A stretch of 51,898 nucleotides of DNA from Mizuhopecten yessoensis (Eukaryota): positions 1-51,898 of the forward strand of contig NW_018479811.1 in NCBI RefSeq assembly GCF_002113885.1, in the 5' to 3' direction. A program made the position numbers and the translations under genes. The first letter of the stretch is position 1. The number at the start of each line of letters is the position of its first letter. Below, piece by piece: positions 145-51,103 of this stretch. Below the pieces are notes generated by a model, which saw only the letters and a list, made by a program, of their open reading frames with translations, made no database searches and had not been told where the DNA came from.

Positions 145-299
145 ATGGCTATCCCCAGACAAGATGGTATACAGGATATCAATGCTGACCTACTTGATGA
201 TGTTTCGAACCAACCACCACCACTTCCTCCAAGAAAACCATTGAAAACTCAAGTGAAACTTACTGAAGAACAACATCGAAATAGAAAATCAAATCCCAG
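145..299 (+). CDS. Gene A1 exon 1 (MAIPRQDG...PPPLPPRKP...NP); proline-rich N-terminal exon of a ~686-aa IDR + NHL propeller protein
   Basis: ATG at 145 is conserved in all four A copies (an in-frame upstream ATG at 109 is an alternative start). Donor CCCAG|GTATGT at 299/300. Length 155 nt (phase 2), identical in all A copies and in frame with exon 2. Confidence 0.8.
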
Positions 300-1532
300 G
301 TATGTCAATTGTTTTATTAATCAAAAGTATACTACTATTTTAAATAAGCAACGAACGAATATACAAAATATGTAAGAGTAAATGTTTGAGGATTCATTGA
401 AGACGCATCTTTCTAAACGTGTCACATACTTGTAAGTGTGGTACCTTTTAGGAATACTGGAGCATTCCATTGCGAGTTATTGTTAAGTACGAACCACATC
501 GTTTGAGCACACTTATTACATGTACGAAATCGTGCTTGAAAAGAAGTCAATTTGAAATTAAAAAGGGGAATGTGTGGAAAAAGAGTTGGATAGGCCCAAT
601 AAGGTTTGCTATCAATGTGTTCAGCTGTAGAAAACTAATTTCGTTAATCCCTGGACGTTCGTTGCAAAAGCATTTTACTCTGGAGAACAGTGTTAATGTG
701 TGTTCACTGTAGAAAAATAATTCACGGTCCTGTAGAGTTATAAACGGGTGTCACTTTGGAGTACGAATTCGATATATTTTCTGTGCTTCAAAAGGTGTTT
801 TACTGTATATAATGAACTATATAAGGGTATGGAAAACCAATCTCCTACAAGTGTCCCTTGCGCTTCGCTTCATTCTCATAGTAAACACAACATATTAAAA
901 ACCCCACAAAAAACGACACACAACGAATCCATACGAGACTGTTCGCTCACAATAGTGCAGTAATATATAGAAATAAATTGTATAAAATAGTTTTGTGTAT
1001 TAAATAGTGTTTTGGAGAATGTGGTATTACGTAGAAATAAATGCCTTAAGTACAGGAAAAGACAAATGTATAGTGATATTCATCATCGATAAGTTATGAA
1101 ATATATTGTGGTGAAGTTAAAAGTTAAGGTTCAATTTACGGATCACTATTGCAAACGACCAATACAACTTTATATATAATGTACGATAGGTTTCTTTTTT
1201 ACTATTCAATAATTCAGAAAACGACTCTTAAAATTGATTGTAAGGGGAAACTATTCTTCTTCTCTAATTCTGTTAGCACTCTTTTTCCTTAAAAAATTAT
1301 AGACATTTTATAACGTTTACATTACGTTCATAAACATGATAACCTTTATTAACGTATGCTTAAAACAATACATAATAACCAAAAATACAAGGTCTCGTTT
1401 CCGAATTGTACATATGAATTTTTATATTTAATTGAGGATTTAGATATGATTTGAACTGCAATAGACATATTCTGTAGACATAATTTATGTAGTATGTTGC
1501 TGATTCATATTTTGTGTTTGTTTTCCATATAG

Positions 1533-2874
1533 ACTGCCAAAAACCGTAAACTTAATGACCTTTCCAAACGACAATGAAGACACAAATAAATTAGCAGCAA
1601 GCTGGGATGTCTCTACTGAAAATACATTCGATAACATCATTCCAGAATGTACCCTTTTAAACCTAAGTGGCAATTCTGAAACCAACGAAACACACCACAA
1701 GACTTACTGTGGATTAGAAACAAACATGTCCGACAGCCTTGACAAGTATTTTATTGGCGATTTGTTCAAGAAATCTTCTGACTTGGATTCAGAAACAAGA
1801 CCCAGACTTTATACACCTGCTTTTAGTACATGTATCAAAGGTATTGAGGCCGTAAAATCTGCAAACAGTGTCGATTTACCAACACTGCCGGGAGAAAAAC
1901 AAAACAAAAGTGATGGTTTGGAAGTGGTAGATTCTAAGAAATCCATCACACACCTCACGAATACACCGTCACAGTCGTCGAAACCTAACAAAATGAAGTC
2001 GGACTCGGCAAGATTTAAAAGGTCGAGGTTGATTTTGACAGACTGCTTCGGAGAAAACAGTTTGTATACATTAGACCATATGAATCCAAAACTCACAGTA
2101 GAAAACGTTCAGGATAGTGACACTGAATCTGAAGAAACAGATGATATTTGGGACACGCCGACACCTAGACAACATTACGTGTATTTAAAAAAGCTCAGAG
2201 AACTGGAACAAGAAGTGAACCAAATAGAACAGCTTCAGAAAGATATAAGTTCAACCGAAACTCTGAAAATATCAAACATACATCGTCCTAAGTTTTCCTC
2301 TCAGCGATCATTGAGCGATAGCGATATCTATATTTCGTTGGATTTTGAAGACAACATGGTAGGTCAAGATATCCCTAAAGAAGGGATTGTAGTCCAAAGT
2401 GATAATCATGACATGAAAAAAACCGCGAGCATAGACAATATCAACAGATGGACAAAAAAGGTCGGATCTAGTACAACAAAACATGATCCACCTAGTATGG
2501 GAGCATCATCAAGCTTTGAAAATATCAAAACCAAGCCCACCAAGCTGTGTGGAAGAATAACTAAACGCGATAAAGACAATTCGGATGGAACATCTCAAAA
2601 ACTTTCAATCAAAGAAGACGCCCGGGCGGAGCTCTCATGTCCCTGTGAAAGACCGTGTGGACATGTTGAAAGGTTGGCGACAACACAAGGAGGTTTCATC
2701 TATGTTTCCTTCAAACAGTGTTCATGGGTTTCTTTGTACGACAATAAATACGAGAGAGTGTACCAGTTTGATACACCTGGCCGGGTGGATAGTCTGGCGG
2801 TGTCTTCCACCGGAGTCCTCTATGTCTCTTGTCCTTATCAGAAGAAGATTTGCATGTTGTCATCAAACCTTCAG
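1533..2874 (+). CDS. Gene A1 exon 2: long Ser/Asp/Thr-rich disordered region, short coiled coil, first blades of an NHL-like propeller
   Basis: Acceptor TTTTCCATATAG|A at 1532/1533 gives AG|A=Arg in frame with ORF 1555..2940. Donor CTTCAG|GTATGC at 2874/2875, phase 0. Blade-like sequences LATTQGGFIYVS and LAVSSTGVLYVSCP. Confidence 0.88.
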
Positions 2875-4650
2875 GTATGCGTCGAAAGACTTAAAATACC
2901 ACTTTTTCAAATGATAAATGTACGATCCAAAGTTTTGTAAATGCTTGTCTAGGTTGCATGAACATTTTGTTCCTATATCCTGGTAATTTAAATTCTAGAC
3001 TTCTGCCTTTCATTTATTCTCTTATTATTCCTAATATGACGTATCTATGTAAAAGCTCTCAGTATTTTGTAGGATATTGCAGAATGATCTGATCTCTTCA
3101 TGAAGCAATAATATATAATTATTTTGTTATGACTATTTTGTATATGCATGAAAACATATAAATAGAAAATGATTAGCAATATAGAATTTGAAATATCAAT
3201 ATAATTGGATCTTTCCACAATAAAATACATGTATATGTTAGAATCTTCCTTGGTCTAATTTCATATCACACTGTACACATTTGCATTCACGTTCTTAATC
3301 TATATATAGTCTATAGTTAATTTTCTTTTTTAGAGTTGGCTATGGTCCATCTTGTTAAATGATACAATCATAATAATGTCATATCCTATACAACATTCAG
3401 GGACTTTTGTTTAAGAACATTTGTGTTACATGAACATGAAAAGTGATATTTACGTGACTTCGTCACGGCTAATATCCTTTTCTCAGGTTCTTATAATCGC
3501 ATGTTTATCTGAACAAAAGTAATTAATTGATAAATAGCAGATGAGATTAGTTTATGTCAAAGTTTTGATAAACACATCGTGACAAGAGACGCATGTGGCG
3601 TTTAGCTTAAAAATGTATGTAAAAGGCTACCTACATATTAAAAAATAAACTGTTTACCGTAGATAACATGCTCAACTTCAGTTAAATTAGTGGCCACCTT
3701 CCCTCGCCTCTAATCCATTTAACTTTCAGGAACACATATCTTCTCTTTTTGTTGTAATATTTTGACAGTATTTGATGTTTAGTGAAATAATCTGTGTATT
3801 TATTTGAGTGTGTATATTTTTCGTGTTTATTTATTAAACCCGAACATTTTCTAACCGCGATAATTTCCCGTTTGCAGTAATTATGTTGATGTTGTAACAA
3901 ACGGAACAGATAACAACATTACTAGATACGCGAGGAGTGACATAGTCGTGATCGTTTAGGCCTGCCACTCGTGAATATGAAAAAATATCGCAATAACTTT
4001 GAACTTTCGTCATTGCAAGTACCAGAGAGTTATTGTAGTGCATTATAGTAATACGATCTTTAATGAAAACAGGAAGGGACTCGATTGAATGTGCATATCT
4101 CAGTTTATATTAATGAACTTCTGACTTTCGTTTGAATTGTTGCAGTGTAGAAGGAGTTTACATATCAAATTTAAGTGAAGCCTACATGTAAACATTCTGT
4201 TCGATTTTAAGAAAAACAAAAATGCAGTAAAAGTATTGTTCAAAACTAACATATCATTTAGGATGGTGTCTGATACGAGATCATCACCTCTCAACAGTCT
4301 GCATTGGCTGTTAATAATAGCTTCCTGGTATTTTCGAGTTTGTAAACATCACCTGTCTGTATCTATAGCATGCCTATAACTTAAAGTCAAACCTGCCTTA
4401 AGCACCCGCCTTCAAATGCCAATTGTTTGCAACTTAAATCAAGTATGTCTTTGAAACTAATTTTGTATAGCTAGAGTAAAACCTGCAAGCTATTGTTTCC
4501 TTTCGTGATGACACTCAAGCATATATAAACTGCATACAAAAGGGGGCCAATGAATTGTGTAAGAGCAAAGATAAAACGCCACTGTTTCCTTGCAGATGTT
4601 AATTATGTTTTTTGTATCTCGCTGTCCATTGTTTATTTCCTTTCTTTTAG

Positions 4651-5214
4651 TTGACAGTTCTGCACTCTTTCATCAAATTGTATCCACGCGGAGTTGCTGT
4701 ATCACCGGACGACGGCACCCTGGTAGTCTGTATGGCGTCTACGGCTGAGGGGTATTCTATGCCAGGTCCTTCAAAGAACAGTTGTCTGATGCGATTTCAA
4801 GGCGAAATCCCCAACAAAGCCGGACAAATTGTGAACAAAAGAAATCATTTTGGATACCCAGTAAAGGTAATCATTAACATGAATGGATTTATATTAGTGT
4901 CAGATTTCGGTTTGAGATGTCTGTTTGTTTTGGATAAAGGGGGAAATATGTTGCAGACGTTTCCTTTACTAGGAGGAGTGCCACTGTGGCATATACATGC
5001 TCTTACAAGTAACTCCGTTAGCTCGTTCTACGTTGTTCAAGGAGGAGCTGGAACACTGTCAATCACACGACTAGGAGAATACCTAGGAACCTTCGAGGAG
5101 ACATCGACATCAACTAAGTATGAACGTTTAGTAAAACGTACAGTTGAAACGGCTTCAATGAATACGGAGGGGCAGATAGTTCTAGCATCTGGAAATGTCA
5201 TCACACTCGTTTAG
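4651..5214 (+). CDS. Gene A1 exon 3: NHL-repeat beta-propeller C-terminal blades
   Basis: Acceptor TTTCTTTTAG|TTG, phase 0. YPRGVAVSPDDGTLVV and FGYPVKVIINMNGFILVSDFGLRCLFVLDKGG match the NHL repeat pattern. Stop TAG at 5212-5214, a few codons earlier than in the paralogs. Confidence 0.88.
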   Translation: MTVLHSFIKLYPRGVAVSPDDGTLVVCMASTAEGYSMPGPSKNSCLMRFQGEIPNKAGQIVNKRNHFGYPVKVIINMNGFILVSDFGLRCLFVLDKGGNMLQTFPLLGGVPLWHIHALTSNSVSSFYVVQGGAGTLSITRLGEYLGTFEETSTSTKYERLVKRTVETASMNTEGQIVLASGNVITLV

Positions 5215-7328
5215 CTCGTATACTAGTAATAAGGTGCGAAAAATGTCAGATTTCTTTTTACTGGAAAACAGTGACAAAAGTTGTTCGCTCAATTAGTGTA
5301 AATATAAGGGCAGATTTTTGGGCAGATTAAGCAGCCGCACATCATGCTACTAATCTTTTATGGTACTGTATAGGCGACGAACAATGTTGGATGCAAGTCT
5401 ACTATTATGTGATTGTGTTGACAACATAAATAGAATCCTGCTTACAGATAGAACATCTTTTGCCAGGTAAAAAACGTATTAGGGGCAGGTGAGGGACTAA
5501 ATAGACAGGCAAAAGTGACGCCCTGTGGTATATTCATATACTGTGATGCTTATTTGGTTTTACGGAATAGTGTACTCATACTTGTTTATTTATACACTAA
5601 TCTATAATATTGTTTATTTACATCTCTCCCTTGTTCAGCTTAGTAAACTCTAACTGCGTTTAATTTTTCGTAAACGCAGAGAAAAAAAGTCTCGGCGGAT
5701 TGATATTTGTTTCAAATATGACGCCGTACACGCTTCAGAGAGATAACAGTCCAATGGCACCATCTAGATACAGAGAACATATTCGGAATCCATTAGGTGT
5801 AACTATACAACGAAATAATGCTGACAAACTTATTATTCCAAGGATGCACATTCTCATATTTTTTTGGCGGTAACGTCAACAATGGCGGCTTTGTTCTGAA
5901 ACATTCGACAGCGTCACTCCATGATCAGTGTATCACTGCGCGTACATGACGACCATTGAAAATAAACAGATTAGTTCGAAGAGCTTCTCACATTGCTTAA
6001 TTTAAAAAAAAAAAAACATGAAAGGAAAAAAATACTGTTCACTCATATATCGATGAGGATTCATTGGAACTATATTGAATCATTAACACACTTTCTTAAT
6101 GATTGACCTTCATTTTGCCGGCGTATACGGTAGTATAAACGCAGCTATTAATGAACATATTCTTTATTTAGTGCTAACGTGCACCATATAATATGTCCGT
6201 TGCCAACTTCGTTAATATTACCGTATACGCCGTCAAAACGATGTTCATTTCTTCAATGCATTAAACCAAATCTTGGTAAGAAATTGGGTTTAGAAATTAA
6301 ATCAATGATACTGTATATGATATGCATTTTATATATATTTCAAACGAACTTTATCATGTAGACTTGTTGTAAGAAAAAAGGTTTCATATCATCAACAGTG
6401 TTAGAAATATGCATGACGTGGTGGATATTTTTGTATAATAAAGATCTATAGCGAACATAATCGTATATTTCCAAAAAAGATGGCGTTCTGGAAACTGAAA
6501 AGAAAATATCAGATTACATAAGTGCTACATGTAATGATATTACTGGTAATACTGAGCAATTAATTTGGAGTATTCAAACATTGAATCATGAAGAAGCCGA
6601 TAATTGACAAAAAACATGTAAGAAATATACATAAATCGGCATTATTAAAGTTGTAACAGTATGTTTATTGAAAGAGTGGCATGTAACTAATTCATATACT
6701 CTTGATCATAAAACCTACATCAGTGTATATGTGTATATGTTACGAAGGAAAATAAACAAGGGAAATAATTTAACTGTTGTTGTTTGTTAATTCCAGATAT
6801 GAGAAGTAAATACTTCCTTATACACATACGCCGTTGGATATAAATGTACATGAACAGCCTCGATTATAGATAGATAGAGGATCGCAATGACACGTTTCAC
6901 TTATACTTTATAATATGTATACATGAAAAACAAAATGTAGACTTTATGGAATATTCTTGATAATCAGAATACGGCAAAGTGATATTTAAGATAGAAAAAT
7001 AAAATGAATAGAAACATATTGTCAACTTCGTAAATAATTTGGAACTTTGATGTTTTCATTTGCCAACAAATGCATGGTTAAATCCAGTTATAATGGCGTT
7101 AGCAATATTACATCTGAAATTGATATTTTTATCGAATTAACATTGATCTTCAAAGGTTAAGTTTTTAAGTCTTATGTCTTCACTTTAAGCATATAGATGC
7201 CCATACATCATAAAACCGTACCAATATACGCTTATGTGAATTTTTTAGACGTTTATAATTAGTTGTTAAATATGACAGATTCCTAAATACATAATATAAC
7301 ATAAAGTGATGAAGGTCTCTGGACAATA

Positions 7329-9154: not shown

Positions 9155-9402
9155 ATGTTTGATCCCAAGTCCCCGGATCGTAGTGACTGGGATTCCAAAA
9201 GTACTCTAATACTCCAAGATAGTCCACCTCCTGTTCCACCAAGAAAGAAAATTGATCCGAAGTCCCCGGATCGTAGTGACTGGGATTACAAGGGTACTCT
9301 AATATTCCCAGATATTCCACCTCTAGTTCCACCAAAAAAGAAAATAACCAATCAAGTAACGATTCGAGACGTTCTGTATGAAGAGGATGTATTAAAGTGC
9401 AG
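9155..9402 (+). CDS. Gene B exon 1: two tandem 31-aa repeats each ending in PPxVPP(R/K)KK
   Basis: ATG at 9155. Donor TGCAG|GTATGT at 9402/9403. Length 248 nt, phase 2, as in the A genes. 93-bp direct repeat at 9161-9253 and 9254-9346. Confidence 0.75.
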
Positions 9403-10159: not shown

Positions 10160-11777
10160 TCGGGCAGGCCAAACCAATGCACAAAGAGTTTCGATCGATC
10201 TTATTACATTTGAGGACGAGCTAGAAGCTGGAGAATCGACACCAATCAGTTCCAAATGTTCCGAAAACTCGAGGAAATTGGATAGTAGAAATCCGGAACT
10301 TTTTCAGTCGATAAATGTCGCCAAGTCAGAAAAGAAACAAATCCAAGATACATCGAGCCGTGAATCATTCATGATAAATCTTGATATGTTTTTCAAAGAT
10401 GATTTGTTCAAATCCCCTTTTAATGCCGTCGATTCAGAGAGTAAAAATGTTCAGCAACCCTCTGAATTTTTCACCTTTTCACCTAAGGAAGGAACCTTGC
10501 AACATGTGAGTGACGATGCTGCCATGAATCCATTTACTTCAGTGACAGATGGTTTGATCTGGAATCCATTTAATCCAGCTACTTCTGAGGACGAGAGTGG
10601 CTATTTGGTACCCAAATCATCACAACAGTATGAAAGAGCTGCTTTTAATTCCGGAAACAACACACAATCAAGAGTGTCTGAACCGAGGAAATGGTCATCG
10701 AGTAATCCTTTTCAAAAGGAGAATTTTGCGTTTGAATTACAATTTCCTGACGACAACAAAATTGAAACACTCAACCCAAAAGCGTTCGAAAGCTGTCTAC
10801 TGNAACAATTTGGTCCATGGGAATATGATGACGTCATTTCATACAAAGGAAATTCTGGGCGACACGTGAGAGATGAATTGGTCTTGAATCCATTTGTTCC
10901 AGCTACTTCTGAAAACGAACAGACGAAAGAGACAAATGCATGTCAATATTCCATCGGTGGTGTTTTCGATTATTCAAGAATGCGTGAACATCAATAACGT
11001 AAACATAATGAAGACGAGAGTGGCTATTTCGTACCCAAATCATCACAACAGTATGAAAGAACTGCTTTTAATTCCGGAAACAACACACAATCAAGAGAAA
11101 AACACCAAAGAAAGGAGCTTTCAGACAACGAGGAAGACGACTACATACGGATGGGACCTGCAAGAAATACCGAGTTTTCCTGCGAGTACAAATCACACCA
11201 GAATAAAGTCGACGAAAACCAGCGACGCCATCAAAAAGCTGATTTAAAATCTGACACCGTCGAAAATACAGGAATATCCGACACCTGCCGTCGAAGTCTA
11301 TTGTCCCAACGTTCGCTTAGTGACAGCGCTATATATAAGGGAGTCGATGTTGACGACAACAAGACGCGAACCTGTGGGAAGTACGAGCACAGTGAAAGAA
11401 AGCAAGTGAAAACATCTTCAAGCAAAGATAACATTGAATGTAAAGCAAAAAGAAGCCTTTGGTCTCGAATAGCTAAATGTATTGTAAAAAACTCCAAACA
11501 AACATCTACAGAACATTTAAATTGGCAAACGAAGCTCGTTTGTGCATGTGGGGGTTCATGTGAACGAATAGACAGTTTGGCGTTATCATCAGATGGACAC
11601 ATATGGGTGTCGTTCCTCCACTGTTCCTGGGTATCAGTGTATGTCCACGAATACATTCCCGTTCGTAAGTTTGACGCTGGATGCATAGTTGACTGTCCAG
11701 CTGTATCCCCGGCTGGTGTGCTTTACATCTCTTGTCCAATGAAGAAGCAGATTCTGATGCTCTCCAAAAACCTCGAG
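10160..11777 (+). CDS. Gene B exon 2: motif-rich disordered region plus first NHL-like blades; one in-frame TAA at 10995-10997 (possible pseudogene or base error)
   Basis: Acceptor CATTTCAG|T gives AG|T=Ser in frame. ORFs 10104..10997 and 11151..11840 are in the same frame, separated only by one TAA. Donor CTCGAG|GTATGT at 11777/11778, phase 0. SQRSLSDSAIY and LYISCP are shared with the A genes. Single N at 10803. Confidence 0.75.
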
Positions 11778-13392: not shown

Positions 13393-13962
13393 TTGATTAT
13401 AATGGGCCAGTTCAATAAACTGCATCCAAGGGGTCTTGCAATATCCCCAATAGATGGAGCTGTGGTCGCCTGTATGACGTCACAAATGGTCGGAAACGTC
13501 ATGAAAGGTCCATCAAAGAATTGTCTGATGAAATTTCCAGGAAAAAAAGCAAACGAAAAAGGACAAGTTCTGAACAAAGAACACTTTCTAGGATATCCTT
13601 TGAGGCTCGCTATCAATGTCAATGGATATATATTAGTTTCAGATTTCGGTTTGAAATGTATTTTTGTTGTAAGTCAAGAGGGACACATGTTGAACGTCTT
13701 TTCGACTGTGGGAGATAGACTTTTTTGTCAGGTGCATAGCCTTACAAGTGGTCATGGAGAGTCGTTCTACGTTGTTCATGGTGGACGTGGTCAATTGTCC
13801 ATCACTCGACTAGGCGAATACCGGGGCACCGTGGTCGAGACGGCGACATCGCGACGACTAGATCCGGATATTTATTGTAAAGTTAGAGCAACTGCAGTGG
13901 TACAGAATGGTCAGCTTGCAGTCACATCTGGAACTATTATCAAATACGTTTCTCCGGATTGA
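13393..13962 (+). CDS. Gene B exon 3: NHL-repeat beta-propeller
   Basis: Acceptor TTTTTATTACAG|TTG, phase 0. HPRGLAISPIDG and FLGYPLRLAINVNGYILVSDFG are colinear with A exon 3. Confidence 0.85.
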   Translation: MIIMGQFNKLHPRGLAISPIDGAVVACMTSQMVGNVMKGPSKNCLMKFPGKKANEKGQVLNKEHFLGYPLRLAINVNGYILVSDFGLKCIFVVSQEGHMLNVFSTVGDRLFCQVHSLTSGHGESFYVVHGGRGQLSITRLGEYRGTVVETATSRRLDPDIYCKVRATAVVQNGQLAVTSGTIIKYVSPD

Positions 13963-19853: not shown

Positions 19854-20558
19854 TTGTACACTCTAGTGGTGACGCCGGCCTTCGTCCGAGGGATAGCTGT
19901 TAGTCCAGTGGACAACTGTCTGATTGCCTGTATGGTGCCGGACCTCACTTATCAACCGGGACAGGATTGTGGTTGTCACAGCGCATGCTTGATACGTTAC
20001 TCTATCCGAGAACATTGCCTGGCATGTTCCAGAAATACAGACTCTGGTCGTTCCCAGCCTTCGGGATCAAAGGTCGAAGGTCAATCAAACAACAAAAGGA
20101 GCAGTAGTACCAGGTGTATTTGTTCGCAAGATGTTTATTGTGTTAAGGGTTCAAAGGTCACTCAAGATAACTTATTTAAATATCCTTTCCGCGTCGCTGT
20201 GAATGCAAATGGGGATATTGCTGTATCTGATCATGGCAATAGAACAGTGCTTCTTTTATCCGACGCGGGAAGCTTGTTGGGAAGGTTTAATCAATCAAAT
20301 ATGAGATTACTAGCTAACCATGCTCTCAGCTATGACGTCAACAATGACCTAATCATTGTACAGTCTGGTAGGAAAAATATTCTACGAATACGAAGTCATT
20401 ACGATGGTTCTACCACCGTTAATAAATCAACCGTGACGGAATTGGAATCACAGATCGTGACAGCCGCGGCGATAGATTCCGAAGGGATATTGCTAGTGGT
20501 AACAGGTCGGACATTGATCAAGGTACTCAAAAAAGGACTCACTGAGCCAATCCACTAA
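19854..20558 (+). CDS. Gene C last exon: NHL-repeat beta-propeller with a Cys-rich insertion
   Basis: Acceptor GTTGACAG|TTG, phase 0. Canonical NHL repeat FKYPFRVAVNANGDIAVSDHGNRTVLLLSDAG. Confidence 0.86.
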   Translation: MYTLVVTPAFVRGIAVSPVDNCLIACMVPDLTYQPGQDCGCHSACLIRYSIREHCLACSRNTDSGRSQPSGSKVEGQSNNKRSSSTRCICSQDVYCVKGSKVTQDNLFKYPFRVAVNANGDIAVSDHGNRTVLLLSDAGSLLGRFNQSNMRLLANHALSYDVNNDLIIVQSGRKNILRIRSHYDGSTTVNKSTVTELESQIVTAAAIDSEGILLVVTGRTLIKVLKKGLTEPIH

Positions 20559-24510: not shown

Positions 24511-24665
24511 ATGGCTATCCCCAGACAAGGTTGTATACAGGATATCAATAATGACCTACCTGATGATCTTTCGACCGACCCGCCACCGCTTCCTCAAAGA
24601 AAACCATTGACAACTCCAGAGAGGTTTTCTGAAGAACAACATCGAAATGGAAAATCAAATCCCAG
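24511..24665 (+). CDS. Gene A2 exon 1 (PPPLPQRKP)
   Basis: Paralog of 145-299. Length 155 nt. Donor CCCAG|GTATGC. Confidence 0.8.
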
Positions 24666-28348: not shown

Positions 28349-29684
28349 GCTTCCAGAGACCTTGAACCTAATGACCTTTCCAAACGACGATGAAGACACA
28401 AATGATTTAACAGCAAGCTGGGTATGCACTGGAAATTCCTTCGATAGTGCCATTTCAGAATGTCCCCTTTTAAACCTAAGCCACAGTTCTGAAACTGACG
28501 AAATACACGATAAAATTTACTCTGGATTAGAAACAAACATGTCCGACAGCCTTGACAAATATTTTATTGGCGATTTGTTCAAGAAATGTTTTGATTTGGA
28601 TTCAGAAACAAGACCCAGACTTTATACACCTGATTTTAGTACATGTATCAAAGGTATTGATGCCGTAAAATCCGCAAACAGTGTCGATTTACCAACACTG
28701 CCGGGAGAAAAACAAAACCAAAGTGATGGTTTGGAAGTGGTAGATTCTACGAAATCCATCACACATCTCACGAATACACCGTCACAGTCGTCGAAACCTA
28801 ACGCGATGAAGTTGGACTCGACAAGATCTAAAAGGTCGAGTTTGATTTTGAAAGGCTGCTTCCGAGAAAACAGTTTGTATACATTCGACCCTATGAATCC
28901 GACAATCACAGTAGAAAATATTCAGGATAGTGACACTGAATCTGAAGAACAGGATCATAGTTGGCACACGCCTAAACCTAGACAACAAGACATGTATTTA
29001 GAAAAGCTCAGAGAACTAGAGCAAGAAGTGAACCAACTACAACAGCTTCAGAAGGACATAAGTACAACCGAACCAGGACTACTAAACATTCAAATTCCTA
29101 AGTTGTCCTCTCAAAGATCTGTAAGCGATAGCGATATCTATAATTCCATTGAGTTGGAAAACAAAATTGAAGGTCGAGATATCAATGATAAACTAAATGT
29201 AATCAAAAGTGATATTCATGACATGAAAAAATCCTCGAGCACAGACAATATCAACAGGAGAACAAATAGAGACAGATCTAGTACATTAAAATATGACCAA
29301 TCTGGTATTAAAGCATCATCAAGCTTTGAAAATATCAAAACCATGGCCACAAAGCTGTGGGGGAAAATAACTAAATGCGATAAAGACAGCTCTGACGGAA
29401 CATCTCAAAAGCTTTCAATCAAAGTTGACGCCCGGGTGGAACTGTCATGTCCATGTGAAAGATCGTGCGGACGTGTTAAAAGGTTGGTGACAACACAAGG
29501 AGGGTACATGTGGGTGGCCTTCATTCAGTGTTCCTGGGTTTCCTTGTACAACAATAGACACGAGAGAGTGTACAAGTTTGATACACGTGGTTGTGTGGAT
29601 AGTTTAGCAGTGACTGCGACCGGAGTCCTCTATGTCTCGTGTCCTCTACAGAAGAGGATCATCATGCTGTCATCAAATCTTCAG
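28349..29684 (+). CDS. Gene A2 exon 2 (disordered region plus first propeller blades)
   Basis: Acceptor CCATACAG|G, phase 2. Open frame within ORF 28323..29753. Donor CTTCAG|GTATGC. Confidence 0.88.
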
Positions 29685-37199: not shown

Positions 37200-37354
37200 A
37201 TGGCTATCCCCAGACAAGATGGTGTACAGGATATCAATGCTGACCTACTTGATGATGTTTCGAACCACCCACCACCACGTCCTCCAAGAAAACCATTGAA
37301 AACTCAAGAGAAACTTACTGAAGAACAACATCGAAATAGAAACTCAAATCCCAG
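37200..37354 (+). CDS. Gene A3 exon 1 (PPPRPPRKP)
   Basis: 155-nt paralogous exon. Donor CCCAG|GTATGT. Confidence 0.75.
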
Positions 37355-38883: not shown

Positions 38884-39951
38884 ACTGCCAAAAATCGTGA
38901 ACTTAATGACCTTTCCAAACGACAATGAAGACAAAAATAAATTAGCAGCAAGCTGGGATGTCTGCACTGGAAATGCATTCGATAACAACATTCCCGAATG
39001 TACCCTTTTAAACCTATGTGGCAATTCTGAAACCGACGAAACACACCATAAGTTTTACTCTGGATTAAAAACAAACATGTCCGACAGCCTTAACAAGTAT
39101 TTTATTGGCGAGTTGTTCCAGCAATCTTCTGATCTGAACACAGAAACAAGACCCATGTTTTATACGCCTGATTTTAGTACATGTAGCAGAGGTATTGATG
39201 CCGTACAACCCGCAAACAGTGTCGATTTACCAACTCCGCTGGGAGAAAGACAAAACAGACAAAGTGATAGTCTTGAAGTGATAGATTCTACGGAATCCAT
39301 AACGCATCTCATGCATACACCGTCACAGTCGTCGAAACTTAACGCGATGGAGAATCAGTCGGACTCGGCAAGTTCTATAAGGTCCTGTGCGTTTTTGAAT
39401 GGCTACTTCCGAGCTAACAGTATCTATTCATTAGATGATACGAATCCAATTAACTCAATGGAAACCATTCAGTATAGTGACACCAAATCTGAAGAAGAGG
39501 ACAATATTTGGGGCACGCCTAAACTTAGACAACAAGACTTGTATTTAAAAATGCTCAGAGAACAAGAAGTGAACCAAATACAACAGCTTCAGGGAGATAC
39601 AAGTACAACCAAATAACCAGGACTACTAAGCATTCATCATCCTAAGTTGTCCTCTCAACGATCTGTGAGCGAAAGTGATATTAATAATTCCATGGAATTT
39701 GAAAACACAGAAACAAGACCCATGTTGTATACGCCTGATTTGTATACATGTAGCAGAGGTATTGATCCTGTACAATCTGCTAATAATGTCGATATACCAA
39801 CACTGCCGGAAGAAAAACTTCAAAGTCAAAGTGATAGTGTTGTAGTGATAGCTACTACGAAATCCACCACGCATCTCTCGAATACACCGTCACAGTCGGC
39901 GAAGCCTAACGCAATTGAGAATCAGTCGGACTCGGCGAGTTCTAAAAGTTC
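38884..39951 (+). pseudogene. Gene A3 exon 2 (runs into the assembly gap): in-frame TAA at 39614-39616 and an internal 567-bp duplication
   Basis: Acceptor CCATATAG|A. ORFs starting at 38897 and 39647 share a frame around one TAA. NTETRPM(F/L)YTPD recurs at 39137 and 39704. Confidence 0.65.
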
Positions 39952-40667
39952 NNNNNNNNNNNNNNNNNNNNNNNNNNNNNNNNNNNNNNNNNNNNNNNNN
40001 NNNNNNNNNNNNNNNNNNNNNNNNNNNNNNNNNNNNNNNNNNNNNNNNNNNNNNNNNNNNNNNNNNNNNNNNNNNNNNNNNNNNNNNNNNNNNNNNNNNN
40101 NNNNNNNNNNNNNNNNNNNNNNNNNNNNNNNNNNNNNNNNNNNNNNNNNNNNNNNNNNNNNNNNNNNNNNNNNNNNNNNNNNNNNNNNNNNNNNNNNNNN
40201 NNNNNNNNNNNNNNNNNNNNNNNNNNNNNNNNNNNNNNNNNNNNNNNNNNNNNNNNNNNNNNNNNNNNNNNNNNNNNNNNNNNNNNNNNNNNNNNNNNNN
40301 NNNNNNNNNNNNNNNNNNNNNNNNNNNNNNNNNNNNNNNNNNNNNNNNNNNNNNNNNNNNNNNNNNNNNNNNNNNNNNNNNNNNNNNNNNNNNNNNNNNN
40401 NNNNNNNNNNNNNNNNNNNNNNNNNNNNNNNNNNNNNNNNNNNNNNNNNNNNNNNNNNNNNNNNNNNNNNNNNNNNNNNNNNNNNNNNNNNNNNNNNNNN
40501 NNNNNNNNNNNNNNNNNNNNNNNNNNNNNNNNNNNNNNNNNNNNNNNNNNNNNNNNNNNNNNNNNNNNNNNNNNNNNNNNNNNNNNNNNNNNNNNNNNNN
40601 NNNNNNNNNNNNNNNNNNNNNNNNNNNNNNNNNNNNNNNNNNNNNNNNNNNNNNNNNNNNNNNNNNN
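39952..40667. other. Assembly gap (716 N)
   Basis: Run of N. Confidence 1.
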
Positions 40668-41589: not shown

Positions 41590-41926
41590 ATGACAGTTCT
41601 GCGGTCTTTCACGAAATTGTATCCACGAGGAGTTGCCGTTTCCCCGGACGACGGCACCCTGATAGTCTGTATGACGTCTCAGCCTGTTGGGCATGTGATG
41701 GAAGAGCCTTCAAAGGACAGTTGTCTGATGCGATTCAAAGGCGAAACTCCAAACGAAACCGGAACAATTGTGAACAAAGGAAATTATTTCGGATATCCGG
41801 TAAAGGTAACCATTAACATGAATGGACTTTTATTAGTGTCAGATTTCGGTTTGAGATGTTTGTTTGTTTTGGATCAGGGGGGAAATATGTTGAGGACGTT
41901 TTCTTCACTAGGAGGAGGATCACTGT
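41590..41926 (+). other. Partial duplicate of A3 exon 3 (with upstream intron), cut at a single N; probable haplotype/assembly overlap
   Basis: About 41128-41926 repeats as 41928-42731 (offset ~805 bp) with scattered SNPs. The junction is the N at 41927. Confidence 0.7.
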
Positions 41927-42394
41927 NTTTTTTAAGGAAATAGTTATGCTCCTGTAACGGTATTGTTAAAATCTTACATACCATTTAGGTAGGTGTATGA
42001 TACGAGGTTATCACCTCTCTATAACTACAAACTATCTACATTGTTTATAAATATGTAACTACCTGGTATTTTTGGGGGTGAAGACACCCCTCTCTGTAAC
42101 TATAGCATACCCGTTGTTTAGAGTCAAACCTACCTTAGGCACCCGCCGTAAAATTAAAATGTCAGGTGTAAAACTTAAATCAAGTAGCCATTGAAACTAA
42201 TTGTACATACCTAGAGTAAAACCTGCAAGAGATTGCTTCCTTTTATGATGACACTGTAGCATGTTCCTACTGCATACAGCCACTAGGGGTATACTTAATT
42301 GTGTACGAACAAGGATAAAATCCCACTGTTTCCTTGCAGATCTTAAATGTGATTTTGTCATCTTGAAAACAAATGTTTATGTCCATTCGTTTAG

Positions 42395-42976
42395 ATGACA
42401 GTTCTGCGCTCTTTCACGAAATTGTATCCACGAGGAGTTGCCGTTTCCCCAGACGACGGCACCCTGATAGTCTGTATGACGTCTCAGCCTGTGGGGCATG
42501 TGATGGAAGAGCCTTCAAAGGACAGTTGTCTGGTGCGATTCAAAGGCGAAACGCCAAACGAAACCGGGACAATTGTGAACAAAGGAAATTATTTCGGATA
42601 TCCGGTAAAGGTAACCATTAACATGAATGGACTTTTATTAGTGTCAGATTTCGGTTTGATATGTTTGTTTGTTTTGGATAAAGGAGGAAATATGTTGAGG
42701 ACGTTTTCTTCACTAGGAGGAGGATCACTGTGGCATGTACATGCTTTTACAAGTAACCTCGTTAGATCGTTCTACGTTGTTCAAGGAGGAGCTGGGACAC
42801 TGTCAATCACACGACTAGGAGAATACCTAGGAACCTTGGAGGAGACATCGACATCAACTAAGTATGAACGTTTAGTAAAACGTACAGTTGAAACGGCTTC
42901 AATGAATACGGAGGGGCAGATAGTTCTAGGATCTGGAAATATCATCACACATGTTTCTCTCATGTATTCGTTATAA
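42395..42976 (+). CDS. Gene A3 exon 3 (NHL propeller, full length)
   Basis: Acceptor TTCGTTTAG|ATG. 193-aa open frame, near-identical to A1 and A2 exon 3. Confidence 0.8.
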   Translation: MTVLRSFTKLYPRGVAVSPDDGTLIVCMTSQPVGHVMEEPSKDSCLVRFKGETPNETGTIVNKGNYFGYPVKVTINMNGLLLVSDFGLICLFVLDKGGNMLRTFSSLGGGSLWHVHAFTSNLVRSFYVVQGGAGTLSITRLGEYLGTLEETSTSTKYERLVKRTVETASMNTEGQIVLGSGNIITHVSLMYSL

Positions 42977-47256: not shown

Positions 47257-47411
47257 ATGGCTATCCCCAGACAAGATGGTATACAGGATATCAATGCTGA
47301 CCTACTTGACGATGTTTCGAACCACCCACCACCACGTCCTCCAAGAAAACCATTGACAACTCAAGGGAAGCTTACTGAATAACAACATCTAACTAGAAAA
47401 TCAAATCCCAG
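47257..47411 (+). pseudogene. Gene A4 exon 1 with in-frame GAA>TAA at 47380-47382
   Basis: 155-nt paralogous exon with intact donor. CTT ACT GAA TAA CAA here versus CTT ACT GAA GAA CAA in A1 and A3. Confidence 0.75.
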
Positions 47412-49755
47412 GTATGTCATTTTTTTCTATTAATCTAAAGTATACTACTATTTTGAATAAGCAAAGAACGAATATACAAAATATGTAGGAGTAAACGTTA
47501 GAGGATTTATTGAAGACGCAACTTACTGAACGTTTCACATATTTGTAAGTGTGGTGCCTTATGGGAACACTGGAACATTCCATTGCGAGTTATCATTAAG
47601 AAGGAACCACTTCATTTGAGCACATTTATTACATGTACGAAATCGTGCTTGAAAAGAAATACATTTCAAACATAGAGGGGTGTGTGTGGAAAAAGAATTG
47701 TATAGGCCCCATAAGGTTTGCTATACAAGTGTTTAGCTGTAGAAAACTAATTTCATCAATCCCTAGACGTTTGCTATAAAAGCATTTTACTCTGGAGAAC
47801 AGTATGTATTAATGTGTTTCACTGTAGAAAACTAATTCAGTGGTCCTGTGGAGTTACAACGGGTTTCATTTTGGAGTACAAATTCGATATCTTTTCTGTG
47901 CTTCAAAAAGTGTTTTACTGTATATAATTAACTATATAAGGGTATGGAAAAACAATTTCCTACAAGGGTCCCTTGCGCTACGCTTCATTCTCTTCTTTTT
48001 TCGATGCTTAATCTCTTTATTTTGAACTCAAAGCCATAGTCATGATTGCATCGCAACCATATGTCGGTGTCTTGTGTAGAAAGTAGCGACAATGTAAATA
48101 ATTGTCGAAAAGTCAAGAGTTCGTTTCGGAAAACTTTTTGTGTTATTAATAAAATGAGATCTACTGAATCGCTAATCTATTATTAGCAGTCAGATATTTA
48201 TTATTTAACTCAAATACTTTTATAATAAATCCGAACTTATATACCGTTGTGATTTTCGACCTAGTAACAACAACATACAAAAAATCCATAAAAACGATAC
48301 ACGACGAATTTATACGAGAATGTTAACTCACAAATATTTTCTCAAAAACAATCTGACGTATACATTTAATTAAATTATTATTTTCATGGAAAACTGATGA
48401 AATAATAGTTGATGGTATTCCATTTAAGGAGACAGGCATATACGTTTATGATTCTATCGCCAAACTTTGTGGAAGTAAGATTTGTTCAAGATCGTATTGT
48501 TTGGGGCATTTAGAAGTACCGTTGGGAAGGATCGAAGACCGCAATGTATTCGTGTATATATCACAGAAAAGCCTGCAAAGATGATATCATATATAAAACA
48601 TAAGTCACGAGTGATTAAGATGTGCTATCTCATGTATAGACGATATTTGTTAGATAAAATAATGTATAAAACGGTACCTGTAAATACTAGTAGTAAAAAA
48701 AGGTATTGGATTAGAAGTAGAAGGCTTCAAACGATACAACCCATACTCATTATAAACAATAAATGACACTGATCTTAGGTAGTTAAAGACCGATATATTA
48801 ATACTCATTTAAGATATTCAATATATGTGTCTTCTTTAAAAGTTTCATACAAATTGTACAAAATAGTTTTGTGTATTTAACAGTGTTTTGGAAACTGTGG
48901 TAATGTGTAGAAATAAATGCCTTAAGTACAGGGAAAGACAAATACATAGTGAGAGTCATCACCGATAAGTGAAAGATAGTGTGGTAAAGTTAAAAGTTAA
49001 GGTACAATTTACGGATCACTAATACAATAATTCAGAAAACGACTCTTAAAATTGATTTTAAGGGGAAAACTATTCTTCTTCTGTAAATCTTTTAATGTAA
49101 GAATAGTTCGGAGAAATGTTGTGCGTAATTTTACAATTATGAAATCACTCTCATAACACGAATATCGCAATTGTGTTTCAAAATTATTAGTTTTTATATT
49201 TTTTATATTATATTACGTTTTATTTGTCATTAATAGATAACAGTTTATAGATGAAAAGTGATACAGAGTTAGTCAATTAGAAGTCAGTGTTTGGTATTCC
49301 TTTTAGTATACCATATGTCTCCTAGTCGGGGAAAGATAACTACTCTCATATCCATGAATACCCCTGATTGATTATGAATGAAGAAAACTTCCGATCGCCA
49401 AAACTCAAATATGTGTTTGTTGGTATGCTGATTTTAATGTGCATGTCCGTCATTCTAGTTTTAATAAAGTAGAAATCTACAAATTCAGTAAAACGTACCA
49501 AAGCACTCTGTTTCCTTAAAAAATGATAGACATTTTATAACGTTTACATAATGTTCATAAACACGATAACCTTGATTAATGTATGCTTAAAACAATACAT
49601 AATAACCAAAAATACAAGTTCTCGTTTCCGAATTATGCATATGAATTCCTATATTTAATTGAGGTTTTAGACTCTAAACTCCTATAGACAAATTCTGTAA
49701 CCATAATTTATGTAGTATGTTGCTGATTAATTTTCTGTGTTTCTATTCCATACAG

Positions 49756-51103
49756 ACTGCCAGAAACCGTGAACTTAATGACCTTTCCAAACGGCAATGA
49801 AGACACAAATCAATTAGCAGAAAGCTGGGATGTCTGCACTGGAAATGCATTCGATAACATCATTCCAGAATGTACCCTATTACACCTAAGTGGCAGTTGT
49901 GAAACCGACGAAACACACCATAAGTTTTACTCTGGATTATAAACAAACATGTCCGACAGCCTTGACAAGTATTTTATTGGCGATTTGTTCAAGAAATCTT
50001 CTGATTTGGATTCAGACACAAGACCCAGACTTTATACACCTGATTTTAGTACATGTAGCGAAAGTATTGATGCCTTACAACCCGCAAACAGTGTCGATTT
50101 ACCAACACTGCCGAGAAAAAGACATCAAAATCAAAGTGACAGTTTTGAAGTCATAGATTCTACGGAATCAATAACGCGTTTCATGAATACACCGTCACAG
50201 TCGTCAAAACTTAACGCGATGGAGAATCCATCGGACTCGGCAAGTTCTGTAAGGTCCGGTGCGTTTTTTGATGGCTACTTCCAAGTTAATAGTATCTATT
50301 CATTAGATGATAAGAATCCAATAAGCTCAATGGAAACCATTCAGGATAGTGACACTAAATCTGATGAACAGGACGATATTTTGGATACGCCTAAACTTAG
50401 ACAACAAGACTTGTATTTAAAGCTCAGAGAACTGGAAAACGAAATGAAACAAATAGAACAGCTTCAAAAAGATATAAGTTCAAACAAAGCTCCAGGACTA
50501 CTTAACATGCATCATCCTAAATTGTCTTTCCAGCGATCTGTGAGCGAAAGCGATATATGTAATTCCATGGAATTTGAAGACAAAATGGAAGGTCTGGATA
50601 TCAATAATGAATTAAATGTAATCGAACCTGATAATCATGATATAAAAAAATCCACGAGCATAGACGATATCAACAAGAGGACAAAAAGAGACAGATCAAG
50701 TACACTATTACATGATCAACCTGATATCAGAGCATCGTCAAGCTTTGGAAATATCAAAACAAAGGCCACAGACCTGTGGGGTAAAATAACTAAATGCGAT
50801 AAAGACACCTCTGACGAAACATCTCAAAAGCTTGTAATCAAAGTAGACGCCCGGGTGGAGCTGTCATGTCCATGTGAAAGATCGTGTGGACCTGTTGAAA
50901 GGTTGGCGACAACACAAGGTGGTTACATCTATGTTTCCTTCAAAAAGTGTTCGTGGGTTTCTTTGTACAACAATAAACACGAGAGAGTGTACCAGTTTGA
51001 TACACGTGGTCGTGTGGATAGTCTGGCGGTGTCTGCGACTGGGGTCCTCTATGTCTCGTGTCCTCATCAGAAGAAGATTATCATGTTGTCATCAAATCAT
51101 CAG
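49756..51103 (+). pseudogene. Gene A4 exon 2 with in-frame GAA>TAA at 49940-49942; exon 3 expected beyond the window end
   Basis: Acceptor CCATACAG|A. GGA TTA TAA ACA AAC ATG here versus GGA TTA GAA ACA AAC ATG in A1 and A2. Open from ATG 49949 to the donor CATCAG|GTATGC. Confidence 0.75.

What the first reader, a model, noticed from the sequence alone, without database searches (positions are those of the whole stretch)
145..51103. Tandem family of RING/B-box-less NHL beta-propeller proteins with motif-loaded disordered arms: candidate uncharacterised adaptor system
Seen in sequence: six same-strand genes share an intron at the same propeller position (phase 0 after L(Q/E)), and five have a phase-2 intron after a PPxPP(R/K)K exon. 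They encode roughly 300-500 aa of low-complexity sequence followed by NHL-type blades. Established knowledge: NHL propellers usually sit behind RING/B-box/coiled-coil modules (TRIM2/3/71, Brat), and such genes are expanded in bivalves. No RING or B-box Cys/His pattern is present here. Small islands persist across divergent paralogs: class-II SH3 ligand PxxPxR, LDKYFxxDLF / LDMFFKDDLF / LNKYF, SQRS(L/V)S(D/E)SxI, and an LWx(K/R)I(T/A)K helix before the propeller. Inference: a lineage-specific scaffold family coupling a ligand-binding propeller to SH3/phospho-signalling or trafficking, evolving by birth and death.
Basis: partly seen in the sequence, partly recalled or inferred. Interest (0 to 1): 0.8.

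Follow-up and report, generated by a model that had tools for sequence, protein, structure and literature searches.

The report
Scallop-only motif-armed NHL propeller genes
Six tandem scallop genes, three apparently intact and three with premature stops, encode a family seen only in scallops: a roughly 400-residue disordered arm with a few conserved docking motifs, fused to a TRIM-type NHL beta-propeller with no ubiquitin-ligase module; it is probably an adaptor, but its function is untested.

Summary
The window is a whole Mizuhopecten yessoensis scaffold with six same-strand paralogs. All share a phase-0 GT..AG intron at one propeller position. Five also have a 52-codon first exon, carrying PPxPP(R/K)K, that ends in a phase-2 intron. 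Transcript contigs join both introns of gene 1 exactly as predicted.

The C-terminal 270 residues fold with high confidence as a six-bladed NHL propeller (pLDDT 87; Z about 27 to TRIM2/3, Brat and Thin). Residues 1-404 are predicted disordered except for one 30-residue helix. I found no RING or B-box. In-frame stops lie upstream of the start codons.

Named relatives occur only in four scallop genera and are all "uncharacterized". They form three old subtypes. The motif islands are conserved across genera. Type 2 (gene 2) also carries 4-6 NPF motifs, which are EH-domain ligands.

Gene 5 also runs into the assembly gap, and its last exon is duplicated across a single N. Gene 6 lacks its last exon because the scaffold ends.

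The adaptor or trafficking role rests only on sequence motifs. The scan had already noted the endocytic look of gene 2's arm on this same window, and RING-less NHL families on other DNA of this genome.

The parts
145..299 (+). g1 (type 1) exon 1: start codon, class II SH3-ligand motif PPPLPPRK at 217-237, phase-2 donor
   Evidence: exon 1-exon 2 joint 299|1533 in RNA contigs of X2; in-frame TAA at 34-36 upstream
1533..2874 (+). g1 exon 2: disordered arm (LDKYFIGDLF 1738-1767, second LD-like motif 2044-2067, helix YLKKLRELEQE from 2182, SQRSLSDSD 2299-2322, LCGRITK 2545-2565) and propeller blades 1-2 from about 2629
   Evidence: transcript contigs cover it
4651..5214 (+). g1 exon 3: propeller blades 3-6 and the stop codon
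   Evidence: Pfam NHL 22.9 bits; joint 2874|4651 in X2
9155..9402 (+). g2 (type 2) exon 1: a 93-bp tandem duplication gives two SH3-ligand motifs (PPPVPPRKK and PPLVPPKKK); phase-2 donor
10160..11777 (+). g2 exon 2: arm with LDMFFKDDLF (10380-10409), four NPF motifs (10527, 10563, 10704, 10887), SQRSLSDS (11304-11327), LWSRIAK (11457-11477) and blades 1-2; in-frame TAA at 10995-10997; single N at 10803
   Evidence: the near-identical copy P0155 has Leu at the stop position
13393..13962 (+). g2 exon 3: propeller blades 3-6
   Evidence: part of annotated protein P0008
17742..18881 (+). g3 (type 3) first coding exon: arm with LDLNKYFSQNSMF (17835-17867), no SH3-ligand exon, blades 1-2
   Evidence: ortholog P0013 has the same layout
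19854..20558 (+). g3 last exon: blades 3-6 with a Cys-rich insertion of about 41 residues in the blade-3 loop
24511..24665 (+). g4 (type 1) exon 1, with PPPLPQRK at 24583-24603
   Evidence: in-frame stop 9 codons upstream of the ATG with no AG between
28349..29684 (+). g4 exon 2: arm (LDKYFIGDLF 28551-28580, helix from 28995, SQRSVSDSD 29109-29132, LWGKITK 29355-29375) and blades 1-2
   Evidence: equals annotated protein P0001, 688 aa
31312..31887 (+). g4 exon 3: blades 3-6
   Evidence: Pfam NHL 27.3 bits; structure models
37200..37354 (+). g5 (type 1) exon 1
38884..39951 (+). g5 exon 2 up to the gap: TAA at 39614-39616, then a second, in-frame copy of part of the arm running into the gap
   Evidence: annotated P0006 ends at the stop
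39952..40667 (.). assembly gap inside g5; the rest of exon 2 and its donor are not in the read letters; not filled
41590..41926 (+). g5 last-exon copy a, cut by the single N at 41927
   Evidence: 41128-41926 is 97% identical to 41930-42731, so an uncollapsed assembly overlap is likely
42395..42976 (+). g5 last-exon copy b, complete
47257..47411 (+). g6 (type 1) exon 1 with an in-frame TAA at 47380-47382
49756..51103 (+). g6 exon 2 with an in-frame TAA at 49940-49942; the last exon lies beyond the scaffold end

Best explanation
This is a tandem cluster of a scallop-restricted (Pectinidae) gene family.

Shown:
- Each protein has no signal peptide, RING or B-box.
- It has an acidic, disordered N-terminal arm of about 300-600 residues.
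- It ends in a basic six-bladed NHL propeller whose nearest relatives by sequence and fold are TRIM-NHL propellers.
- Three subtypes predate the split of four scallop genera: type 1 = g1, g4, g5, g6; type 2 = g2; type 3 = g3.
- Type 1 has multiplied in M. yessoensis and is decaying in part: g5 and g6 carry stops, as does the type-2 copy g2.

Inferred:
- The proteins act as adaptors. The propeller would hold a still unknown ligand.
- The few conserved islands of the arm would recruit partners. These islands are a textbook class II SH3 ligand at the N-terminus, one or two LD-like amphipathic motifs (LDxYFxxDxF), a short coiled-coil helix in type 1, a basophilic/CK2-type serine cluster (SQRSxSxSD, which fits a 14-3-3 site) and a basic helix before the propeller.
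- Type 2 adds 4-6 NPF motifs. With its SH3 ligand, this gives the two kinds of ligand that EH/SH3 endocytic scaffolds such as intersectin and Eps15 read. Type 2 would then work like stonin 2: an N-terminal motif arm plus a C-terminal cargo-binding domain.
For: Gene models and splicing. RNA joints at both g1 introns.

Fold:
- AF2 propeller model: pLDDT 87.4, pTM 0.89.
- Foldseek: Brat 1q7f, E 3e-13, TM 0.75.
- VIA-align: Z 27.4-27.7, rmsd 2.9 A over 254-258 residues to Thin, TRIM3, TRIM2 and Brat.
- Sequence profile against solved structures: TRIM3 2.8e-17, TRIM2 3.6e-16, TRIM71 1e-14.

Disorder: in the full-length model, residues 1-265 and 291-404 have pLDDT below 50, with helices at 262-291 and 379-393. 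The arm has pI 4.4-5.0 in seven of eight proteins (6.35 in P0155) and GRAVY about -0.9. The propeller has pI 8.5-9.5 in seven of eight members (7.56 in P0011).

No RING or B-box. Stops upstream of the ATG.

Distribution:
- The profile search of 1.84 billion proteins gave 11 hits at or below 1e-30, all of this family.
- It then dropped to about 1e-25 for generic NHL proteins. Of the ten I scanned, six were RING and/or B-box plus NHL proteins.
- Named members come only from M. yessoensis, Pecten maximus, Argopecten irradians and Ylistrum balloti, and all are 'uncharacterized'.

Three subtypes, each with three or more genera.

Motif conservation: only 32 of 409 arm positions are invariant across four genera, and they cluster in the islands; the propeller has 90 of 279.

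NPF: 4, 4 and 6 copies in type 2 of three genera against 0.05-0.13 expected. None of 2000 shuffles reached the observed count, and the flanks differ.

Selection: dN/dS is 0.28-0.31 in blades 1-2, 0.50-0.77 in exon 3 and 0.57-0.93 in the arm.

Stonin 2 layout and NPF-EH binding: PMC2174325.
Against: - No binding or localisation data exist, and all partner assignments rest on 3-10-residue motifs.
- Type 1 and type 3 have no NPF.
- No member has clathrin-box, DPF/DPW or FxDxF motifs above chance.
- The annotated A. irradians and Y. balloti type-1 models lack the SH3-ligand exon. This may be an annotation gap; I did not check it.
- The NPF copies partly arise from internal repeats, so they are not fully independent.
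- The basic propeller fits an RNA-binding role equally well.
- Recent paralogs are only weakly constrained.
- No paper mentions these loci.
Confidence: 0.5

Rival explanations
1. The proteins are RNA-binding regulators of the Brat/LIN-41 kind without the E3 module. The basic NHL propeller binds mRNA elements, and the arm recruits effectors or controls localisation.
For: The closest folds and sequences are RNA-binding TRIM-NHL propellers: Brat, TRIM71/LIN-41 and Mei-P26. Propeller pI is 8.5-9.5 in most members. NHL domains recognise RNA through positively charged surfaces that evolve fast (PMC5908797).
Against: TRIM2, TRIM3 and Thin score as well as the RNA binders. Identity to any of them is only 14-17%. 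I could not map charge onto the top face. One member has a neutral propeller, pI 7.6.
Confidence: 0.2
2. The family is a diversifying intracellular recognition repertoire, like the other tandem RING-less NHL arrays noted in this genome. The propeller loops recognise variable, for example pathogen-derived, ligands, and the arm signals.
For: Tandem multiplication with pseudogenes. dN/dS in exon 3 (0.50-0.77) is higher than in blades 1-2. Paralog differences and the type-3 insertion fall in the blade-3 loops. A C1q-domain gene lies inside the cluster. The scan has similar notes for other arrays.
Against: No pairwise dN/dS exceeds 1 in the propeller, and I ran no site-wise test. Only a handful of copies exist, against the very large B-box/NHL families. 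Three old subtypes are kept one-to-one across genera, which points to fixed rather than variable ligands.
Confidence: 0.15
3. The genes are decaying remnants of TRIM-NHL genes that lost their N-terminal modules and are transcribed but have no function of their own.
For: Three of the six copies have premature stops. dN/dS in the arm is 0.57-0.93, and 0.9-1.9 in exon 1 over about 150 sites.
Against: Full-length intact orthologs of all three subtypes persist in four genera. The motif islands and propeller are conserved. dN/dS is 0.28-0.31 in blades 1-2. g1 gives correctly spliced transcripts.
Confidence: 0.07

Closest known systems
TRIM-NHL proteins (Brat, TRIM2, TRIM3, TRIM71/LIN-41, Thin, Mei-P26)
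   Same: Both end in a six-bladed NHL propeller. These are the best matches by fold (Z about 27, TM 0.70-0.75) and by sequence profile. The nearest non-family database hits include RING/B-box/NHL proteins.
   Different: There is no RING, no B-box and no long coiled coil. A disordered arm of about 400 residues carrying short motifs takes their place, so no E3 ligase activity can be expected. Propeller identity is only 14-17%. A conserved phase-0 intron splits the propeller after blade 2.
RING-less B-box/coiled-coil/NHL arrays of the same scallop genome
   Same: Both are tandem, lineage-expanded NHL propeller genes without a RING in M. yessoensis.
   Different: Those families, as the notes describe them, keep the B-box and coiled coil and are very large. 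This family has neither, numbers only a handful of genes, and has three conserved subtypes.
Stonin 2 and other motif-armed endocytic adaptors (epsin, Numb, Dab2)
   Same: The working layout is a long disordered, proline-containing arm with NPF motifs plus a folded ligand-binding domain. In stonin 2 the arm is N-terminal and the binding domain C-terminal, as here (PMC2174325).
   Different: There is no homology. The folded domain is an NHL propeller, not a mu-homology, ENTH or PTB domain. Only type 2 has NPF motifs, and no AP-2 or clathrin motifs occur above chance.
Other RING-less NHL proteins (NHLRC2, NHLRC3, teneurin NHL, PAL)
   Same: An NHL propeller used outside the TRIM context. Teneurin and PAL appear lower in the fold list, at Z about 24.
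   Different: From my own knowledge, those are thioredoxin-fused, secreted or extracellular proteins. This family has no such domain and no signal peptide, and it is closer to TRIM-type propellers.

Membership tests
NHL-repeat beta-propeller (Pfam PF01436) | Six four-stranded blades closing into a propeller | tested here: met
   AF2 model with pLDDT 87.4 and pTM 0.89, all-beta with 23 strands. Z 27 and rmsd 2.4-3.0 A over 245-258 residues to solved NHL domains.
NHL-repeat beta-propeller (Pfam PF01436) | Sequence match to the NHL repeat model above the curated cut-off | tested here: met
   g4 exon 3 scores 27.3 bits and g1 exon 3 22.9 bits against a cut-off of 20. g2 (17.6) and g3 (14.9) fall below it. 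The family profile hits TRIM3, TRIM2 and TRIM71 NHL chains at 1e-14 to 3e-17.
TRIM / RBCC (TRIM-NHL subclass) | N-terminal RING finger | tested here: not met
   No RING pattern in any of the six frames of the window. No Pfam RING hit in the exon translations. In-frame stops lie upstream of the ATG in g1, g4 and g5. The transcript joints of g1 add no such exon.
TRIM / RBCC (TRIM-NHL subclass) | B-box zinc finger | tested here: not met
   No B-box pattern and no Pfam B-box hit. By contrast, B-box hits are clear in the outgroup proteins P0021, P0022, P0031, P0036, P0041 and P0065.
TRIM / RBCC (TRIM-NHL subclass) | Long coiled coil between the B-box and the C-terminal domain | tested here: inconclusive
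   Only one helix of about 30 residues (262-291 of P0001, pLDDT 54-75) with a leucine heptad pattern, conserved in type 1. From my own knowledge, this is far shorter than a TRIM coiled coil.
EH-domain ligands / endocytic adaptor arms | Multiple NPF motifs in a disordered region, conserved in orthologs | tested here: met
   Type 2 only: 4, 4 and 6 NPF in M. yessoensis, P. maximus and A. irradians against 0.05-0.13 expected, with none of 2000 shuffles reaching the observed count. There are none in types 1 and 3.
EH-domain ligands / endocytic adaptor arms | AP-2 or clathrin motifs (DPF/DPW, FxDxF, clathrin box) | tested here: not met
   Counts are 0 or 1 and not above shuffled expectation in all nine proteins.
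EH-domain ligands / endocytic adaptor arms | Physical binding to EH-domain proteins and a role in endocytosis | not testable with these tools
   Needs pull-down, yeast two-hybrid or localisation experiments.
Class II SH3 ligands | PxxPx(R/K) core in an accessible region, conserved in orthologs | tested here: met
   PPPLPPRK, PPPRPPRK, PPPLPQRK and PPPVPPRKK occur in exon 1 of five genes. The P. maximus type 1 and the P. maximus and A. irradians type 2 proteins have the same motif. The region has pLDDT of about 30-40. Binding was not tested.

The most novel reading that the evidence does not exclude
A scallop-specific class of sorting adaptor in which an NHL propeller serves as the cargo- or ligand-recognition domain, in place of the usual mu-homology, PTB or ENTH domain. 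An N-terminal arm plugs it into the EH/SH3 endocytic scaffold network (intersectin, Eps15) through an SH3 ligand and NPF arrays. The LDxYFxxDxF island shared by all three subtypes would be a new docking motif.
Probability: 0.2. Interest if true: 0.6.

Novelty: new variant of a known kind. Interest (0 to 1): 0.38.

Why it matters
It shows a way in which the large molluscan TRIM-NHL stock can give rise to a different kind of protein. The ligase module is replaced by a disordered arm whose only conserved parts are short docking motifs, and three subtypes have been kept across the four scallop genera sampled.

If the adaptor reading is right, it would be a first case of an NHL propeller used as the recognition end of an EH/SH3-linked scaffold. 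It would also give a small, tractable set of motifs and a well-folded domain to test.

As it stands, this is an uncharacterised, taxonomically restricted family whose function is only predicted.

Tried and rejected
- Weak Pfam hits in the arm (BORCS6, zf_Hakai, POTRA_3, MerR and DUFs, E 0.002-0.33, far below their cut-offs) were rejected as chance.
- The ESM Atlas search with the arm of P0001 gave no usable hit.
- Paper searches found nothing on this family, either by the six LOC identifiers (0 papers) or by scallop/NHL terms. The bivalve TRIM-NHL search gave no directly relevant paper.
- Raw-read run X19 laid no reads, so it is no test.
- The first dN/dS run gave absurd values for g6 because MAFFT dropped the stop symbol. 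That is how the g6 and g5 stops came to light. It was redone with X at the stops.
- In the tree script, the loci of scaffold C1190 (minus strand) were not parsed and are left out of the tree.
- The organisms behind three more distant last-exon homologs (contigs of SRR8643648, SRR27895284 and JGI 3300005037) could not be determined. They keep the same intron position.
- Fits to FFAT, LIR, clathrin-box and beta2-appendage motifs were checked by eye for the LDxYFxxDxF island and rejected. The paxillin LD motif is only a loose resemblance.
- Joined spliced models were not built or searched. Exons were searched by reference, and the full-length proteins used are database entries (P0001, P0155 and others).
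- The gap was not filled, and its letters were not looked up in other copies.


Full report
**What the window is.**
The 51,898 bases are a complete scaffold (C76484) of the Yesso scallop Mizuhopecten yessoensis. Proteins encoded here carry that species' NCBI names, all "hypothetical" or "uncharacterized".

**Gene structures.**
Mapping the annotated proteins back to the window and reading the junctions gives six + strand gene units.
- g1: 145-299, 1533-2874, 4651-5214.
- g2: about 9155-9402, 10160-11777, 13393-13962.
- g3: 17742-18881, 19854-20558.
- g4: 24511-24665, 28349-29684, 31312-31887. This is protein P0001, 688 aa.
- g5: 37200-37354, then 38884 up to the gap. Its last exon is present twice, at 41590-41926 and 42395-42976.
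- g6: 47257-47411, 49756-51103. Its last exon lies beyond the scaffold end.

**Introns.**
- The propeller intron is phase 0 in every gene where it can be read. Donors are CAG/GAG|GTATG or |GTAGG directly after L(Q/E), or HQ in g6. Acceptors are pyrimidine-rich ...AG| directly before the first codon of the last exon.
- The first exon of g1, g4, g5 and g6 has 52 codons (MAIPRQ...PPPxPxRK...NPR) and ends AG|GTATG in phase 2.
- g2 has an equivalent exon with a phase-2 donor and a matching acceptor.
- The proline motif therefore sits 21 codons before the donor rather than at the exon's end.
- g3 and its Pecten ortholog start in the large exon and have no such exon.

**RNA evidence.**
I laid four runs on window 1-5300.
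- Contigs of X2 join 299|1533 and 2874|4651 with GT..AG ends. These are exactly the two predicted g1 introns.
- Exon bins in X2 have depth 12-160. Intron 1 is empty, and intron 2 is empty or shallow (0-7).
- polyA raw reads of X24 reach 4651 from sequence that encodes the exon-2 end of the close paralog or allele P0004. The same splice is therefore used there.
- X19 gave no reads and is no test.
- The tissues are unknown. Only g1 was tested, because only one call was allowed.

**No hidden ligase module.**
- No RING or B-box Cys/His pattern occurs in any of the six frames of the window.
- Pfam finds none in the exon translations.
- In g4 and g5 an in-frame stop lies 9-13 codons upstream of the ATG with no AG between.
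- In g1 a TAA at 34-36 is in frame with the ATG at 145, and transcript contigs cover this stretch.
- An in-frame ATG 9-12 codons further upstream could add a few residues, but no domain.

**The propeller.**
- An AlphaFold2 model of P0001 residues 410-688, built with an 11-row family alignment, has pLDDT 87.4 and pTM 0.89 and is all-beta.
- Foldseek's best match is the Brat NHL domain (E 3e-13, TM 0.75). The Pizza6 designs and the TRIM2, TRIM3, Thin, TRIM71 and Mei-P26 NHL domains follow.
- VIA-align gives Z 27.4-27.7 at rmsd 2.9 A over 254-258 residues for Thin, TRIM3, TRIM2 and Brat.
- A family profile hits TRIM3, TRIM2, TRIM71, Thin and Brat chains at 3e-17 to 7e-11.
- Pfam NHL repeats pass the curated cut-off in g4 and g1, but not in g2 or g3.
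- The domain is a genuine six-bladed NHL propeller of the TRIM type, at 14-17% identity to solved ones.

**The arm.**
- In the full-length model of P0001, residues 1-265 and 291-404 have pLDDT below 50.
- One helix (262-291, pLDDT up to 75) covers the conserved YLEKLRELEQEVNQL segment. A low-confidence helix (379-393) covers LWGKITK.
- The arm is acidic and hydrophilic: pI 4.4-5.0 in seven of eight proteins (6.35 in P0155) and GRAVY about -0.9. The propeller is basic: pI 8.5-9.5 in seven of eight members (7.56 in P0011).

**Distribution.**
- A profile search of 1.84 billion representatives found 11 proteins at or below 1e-30, all of this family.
- Scores then dropped to about 1e-25, where generic NHL proteins begin. 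Of the ten I scanned with Pfam, six were RING and/or B-box plus NHL proteins.
- Named members come only from four genera of Pectinidae: Mizuhopecten, Pecten, Argopecten and Ylistrum. All are "uncharacterized".
- Three short unnamed contigs carry more distant last-exon homologs. At least three of the four loci (P0017 twice, P0014) show an acceptor at the same position; the acceptor of the P0016 contig is not resolved. Their organisms could not be determined.
- A tree of the last-exon pieces gives three groups, each with three or more genera. Type 1 (g1, g4, g5) has support 97/97. Type 3 (g3) has 100/99. Type 2 (g2) groups at 86/95, below the tool's starred level. Types 1 and 2 together have 99/99. 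Members of C1190 were left out, and g6 has no last exon in the window.
- In Argopecten and Ylistrum the subtype genes have consecutive accession numbers, which suggests that the cluster itself is old.
- The word search found six M. yessoensis type-1 clusters against one in P. maximus.
- Scaffolds C1190, C3578 and C4560 carry copies that are about 80-97% identical over non-coding flanks, with best matches of 93-97%. Some of them are probably haplotigs.

**Motifs.**
Across type 1 proteins of four genera, only 32 of 409 arm positions are invariant, against 90 of 279 in the propeller. The invariant arm positions cluster in these islands:
- LDxYFxxDxF;
- a second copy, LNxYFRxDSxF;
- the helix;
- KLSSQRSVSESD;
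- part of the NIKT...LW..ITK segment.

Other points:
- The N-terminal PPPLPPRKPL is identical in M. yessoensis and P. maximus type 1, and recurs in type 2 of three genera. From established knowledge, PxxPxR is the class II SH3 consensus, and I recall PPPVPPR as the Sos1 peptide bound by Grb2/Sem-5. That recollection is a lead, not a test.
- The LD-like island is the arm element most clearly shared by all three subtypes.
- Type 2 also has 4, 4 and 6 NPF motifs in three genera, against 0.05-0.13 expected. None of 2000 shuffles reached that count, and the flanks differ. [quoted passage not shown]
- Clathrin-box, DPF/DPW and FxDxF motifs are not enriched.

**Decay and assembly problems.**
- g2 has a TAA at 10995-10997 where its near-identical copy P0155 has Leu. 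About 20 codons are missing at the single N at 10803.
- g5 has a TAA at 39614-39616, where the annotated P0006 ends. It then continues in frame with a second copy of part of the arm, straight into the gap at 39952.
- The right flank of the gap, 40668-41589, matches no family protein in any frame and contains an 11-bp tandem repeat.
- The rest of g5's exon 2 is therefore not in the read letters. Continuity and frame across the gap cannot be known, and I did not fill it or read it from other copies.
- The two g5 last-exon copies are 97% identical over 802 bases ending exactly at the N at 41927. This looks like an uncollapsed assembly overlap.
- g6 has TAA stops at 47380-47382 and 49940-49942.
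- g1, g3 and g4 are open throughout.

**Selection among the recent type 1 copies.**
- Blades 1-2: dN/dS 0.28-0.31.
- Last exon: 0.50-0.77.
- Arm: 0.57-0.93.
- Exon 1: 0.9-1.9 over about 150 sites.
- The differences in the last exon fall mainly in the long blade-3 loops. There type 3 carries a Cys-rich insertion of about 41 residues.

**Reading.**
Shown: a Pectinidae-restricted, transcribed family of RING- and B-box-less proteins with a disordered, motif-bearing arm and a TRIM-type NHL propeller. It has three old subtypes, and type 1 is undergoing birth and death.

Inferred: an adaptor role. This reading is most specific for type 2, where the SH3 ligand plus NPF array matches what EH/SH3 endocytic scaffolds read. 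That layout parallels stonin 2.

Rivals are:
- an RNA-binding role for the basic propeller (PMC5908797);
- a diversifying recognition repertoire like the other NHL arrays noted in this genome;
- non-functional remnants.

The scan had already flagged the endocytic look of gene 2's arm on this same window. I reached the NPF count independently and tested it against shuffles and orthologs. I did not test the phosphotyrosine part of that note.

Exons were searched by reference, and the full-length sequences are database entries.

Noticed in passing
window 15652-16137 (- strand): An open frame encoding a C1q domain (Pfam PF00386, E 9.6e-21) lies between g2 and g3 on the opposite strand. It is unrelated to the NHL family.
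   Followed up: partly
window 9159-9345: A 93-bp tandem duplication (89% match) inside g2 exon 1 duplicates the whole SH3-ligand segment, giving PPPVPPRKK and PPLVPPKKK in one arm.
   Followed up: partly
window 21088-21554: A 28-bp tandem repeat of about 16 copies (93% match) lies just downstream of g3. The copies of this region on scaffolds C1190 and C3578 carry it too.
   Followed up: no
window 19854-20558; P0013, P0015: Type 3 propellers carry a conserved insertion of about 41 residues in the blade-3 loop, with an HCxxC...CxCxxxxxC pattern. It may be a small metal-binding or disulfide knot on the propeller.
   Followed up: no
window 39647-39951; P0002 residues 337-540: Part of the arm is duplicated internally in g5, and the 812-aa protein P0002 from another scaffold has a similar duplication. 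The arm therefore also grows by segmental repeats.
   Followed up: partly
window 10803, 41927, 43187: Single-N joints. At 10803 about 20 codons present in the near-identical copy P0155 are missing. At 41927 the N separates two 97% identical copies of about 800 bases.
   Followed up: partly
G000 scaffolds C1190, C3578, C4560 (loci L002-L007, L010, L014, L016): These scaffolds carry copies of the same genes. Best matches are 93-97% identical over introns and flanks, and matches to other paralogs are about 80-90%. They may be haplotigs rather than extra loci, so the true copy number is uncertain.
   Followed up: partly
window about 11090-11160 (g2 arm); P0009: An acidic Tyr motif, DDYIRM in g2 and GEYITM in the Pecten type 2 protein, fits the YxxM pattern. 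This bears on the scan's separate note about phosphotyrosine signalling in this arm.
   Followed up: no
window 109-144, 24484-24510, 37164-37199: An in-frame ATG lies 9-12 codons upstream of the annotated MAIPRQ start (MFVIIFNHSTPH in g1; similar in g4 and g5). The true start could be slightly earlier.
   Followed up: no
P0001 residues 417-425 and family-wide: A conserved CPCxxxC cluster lies at the first strand of the propeller in types 1 and 2 but not type 3. The domain holds 10-15 cysteines in all.
   Followed up: no
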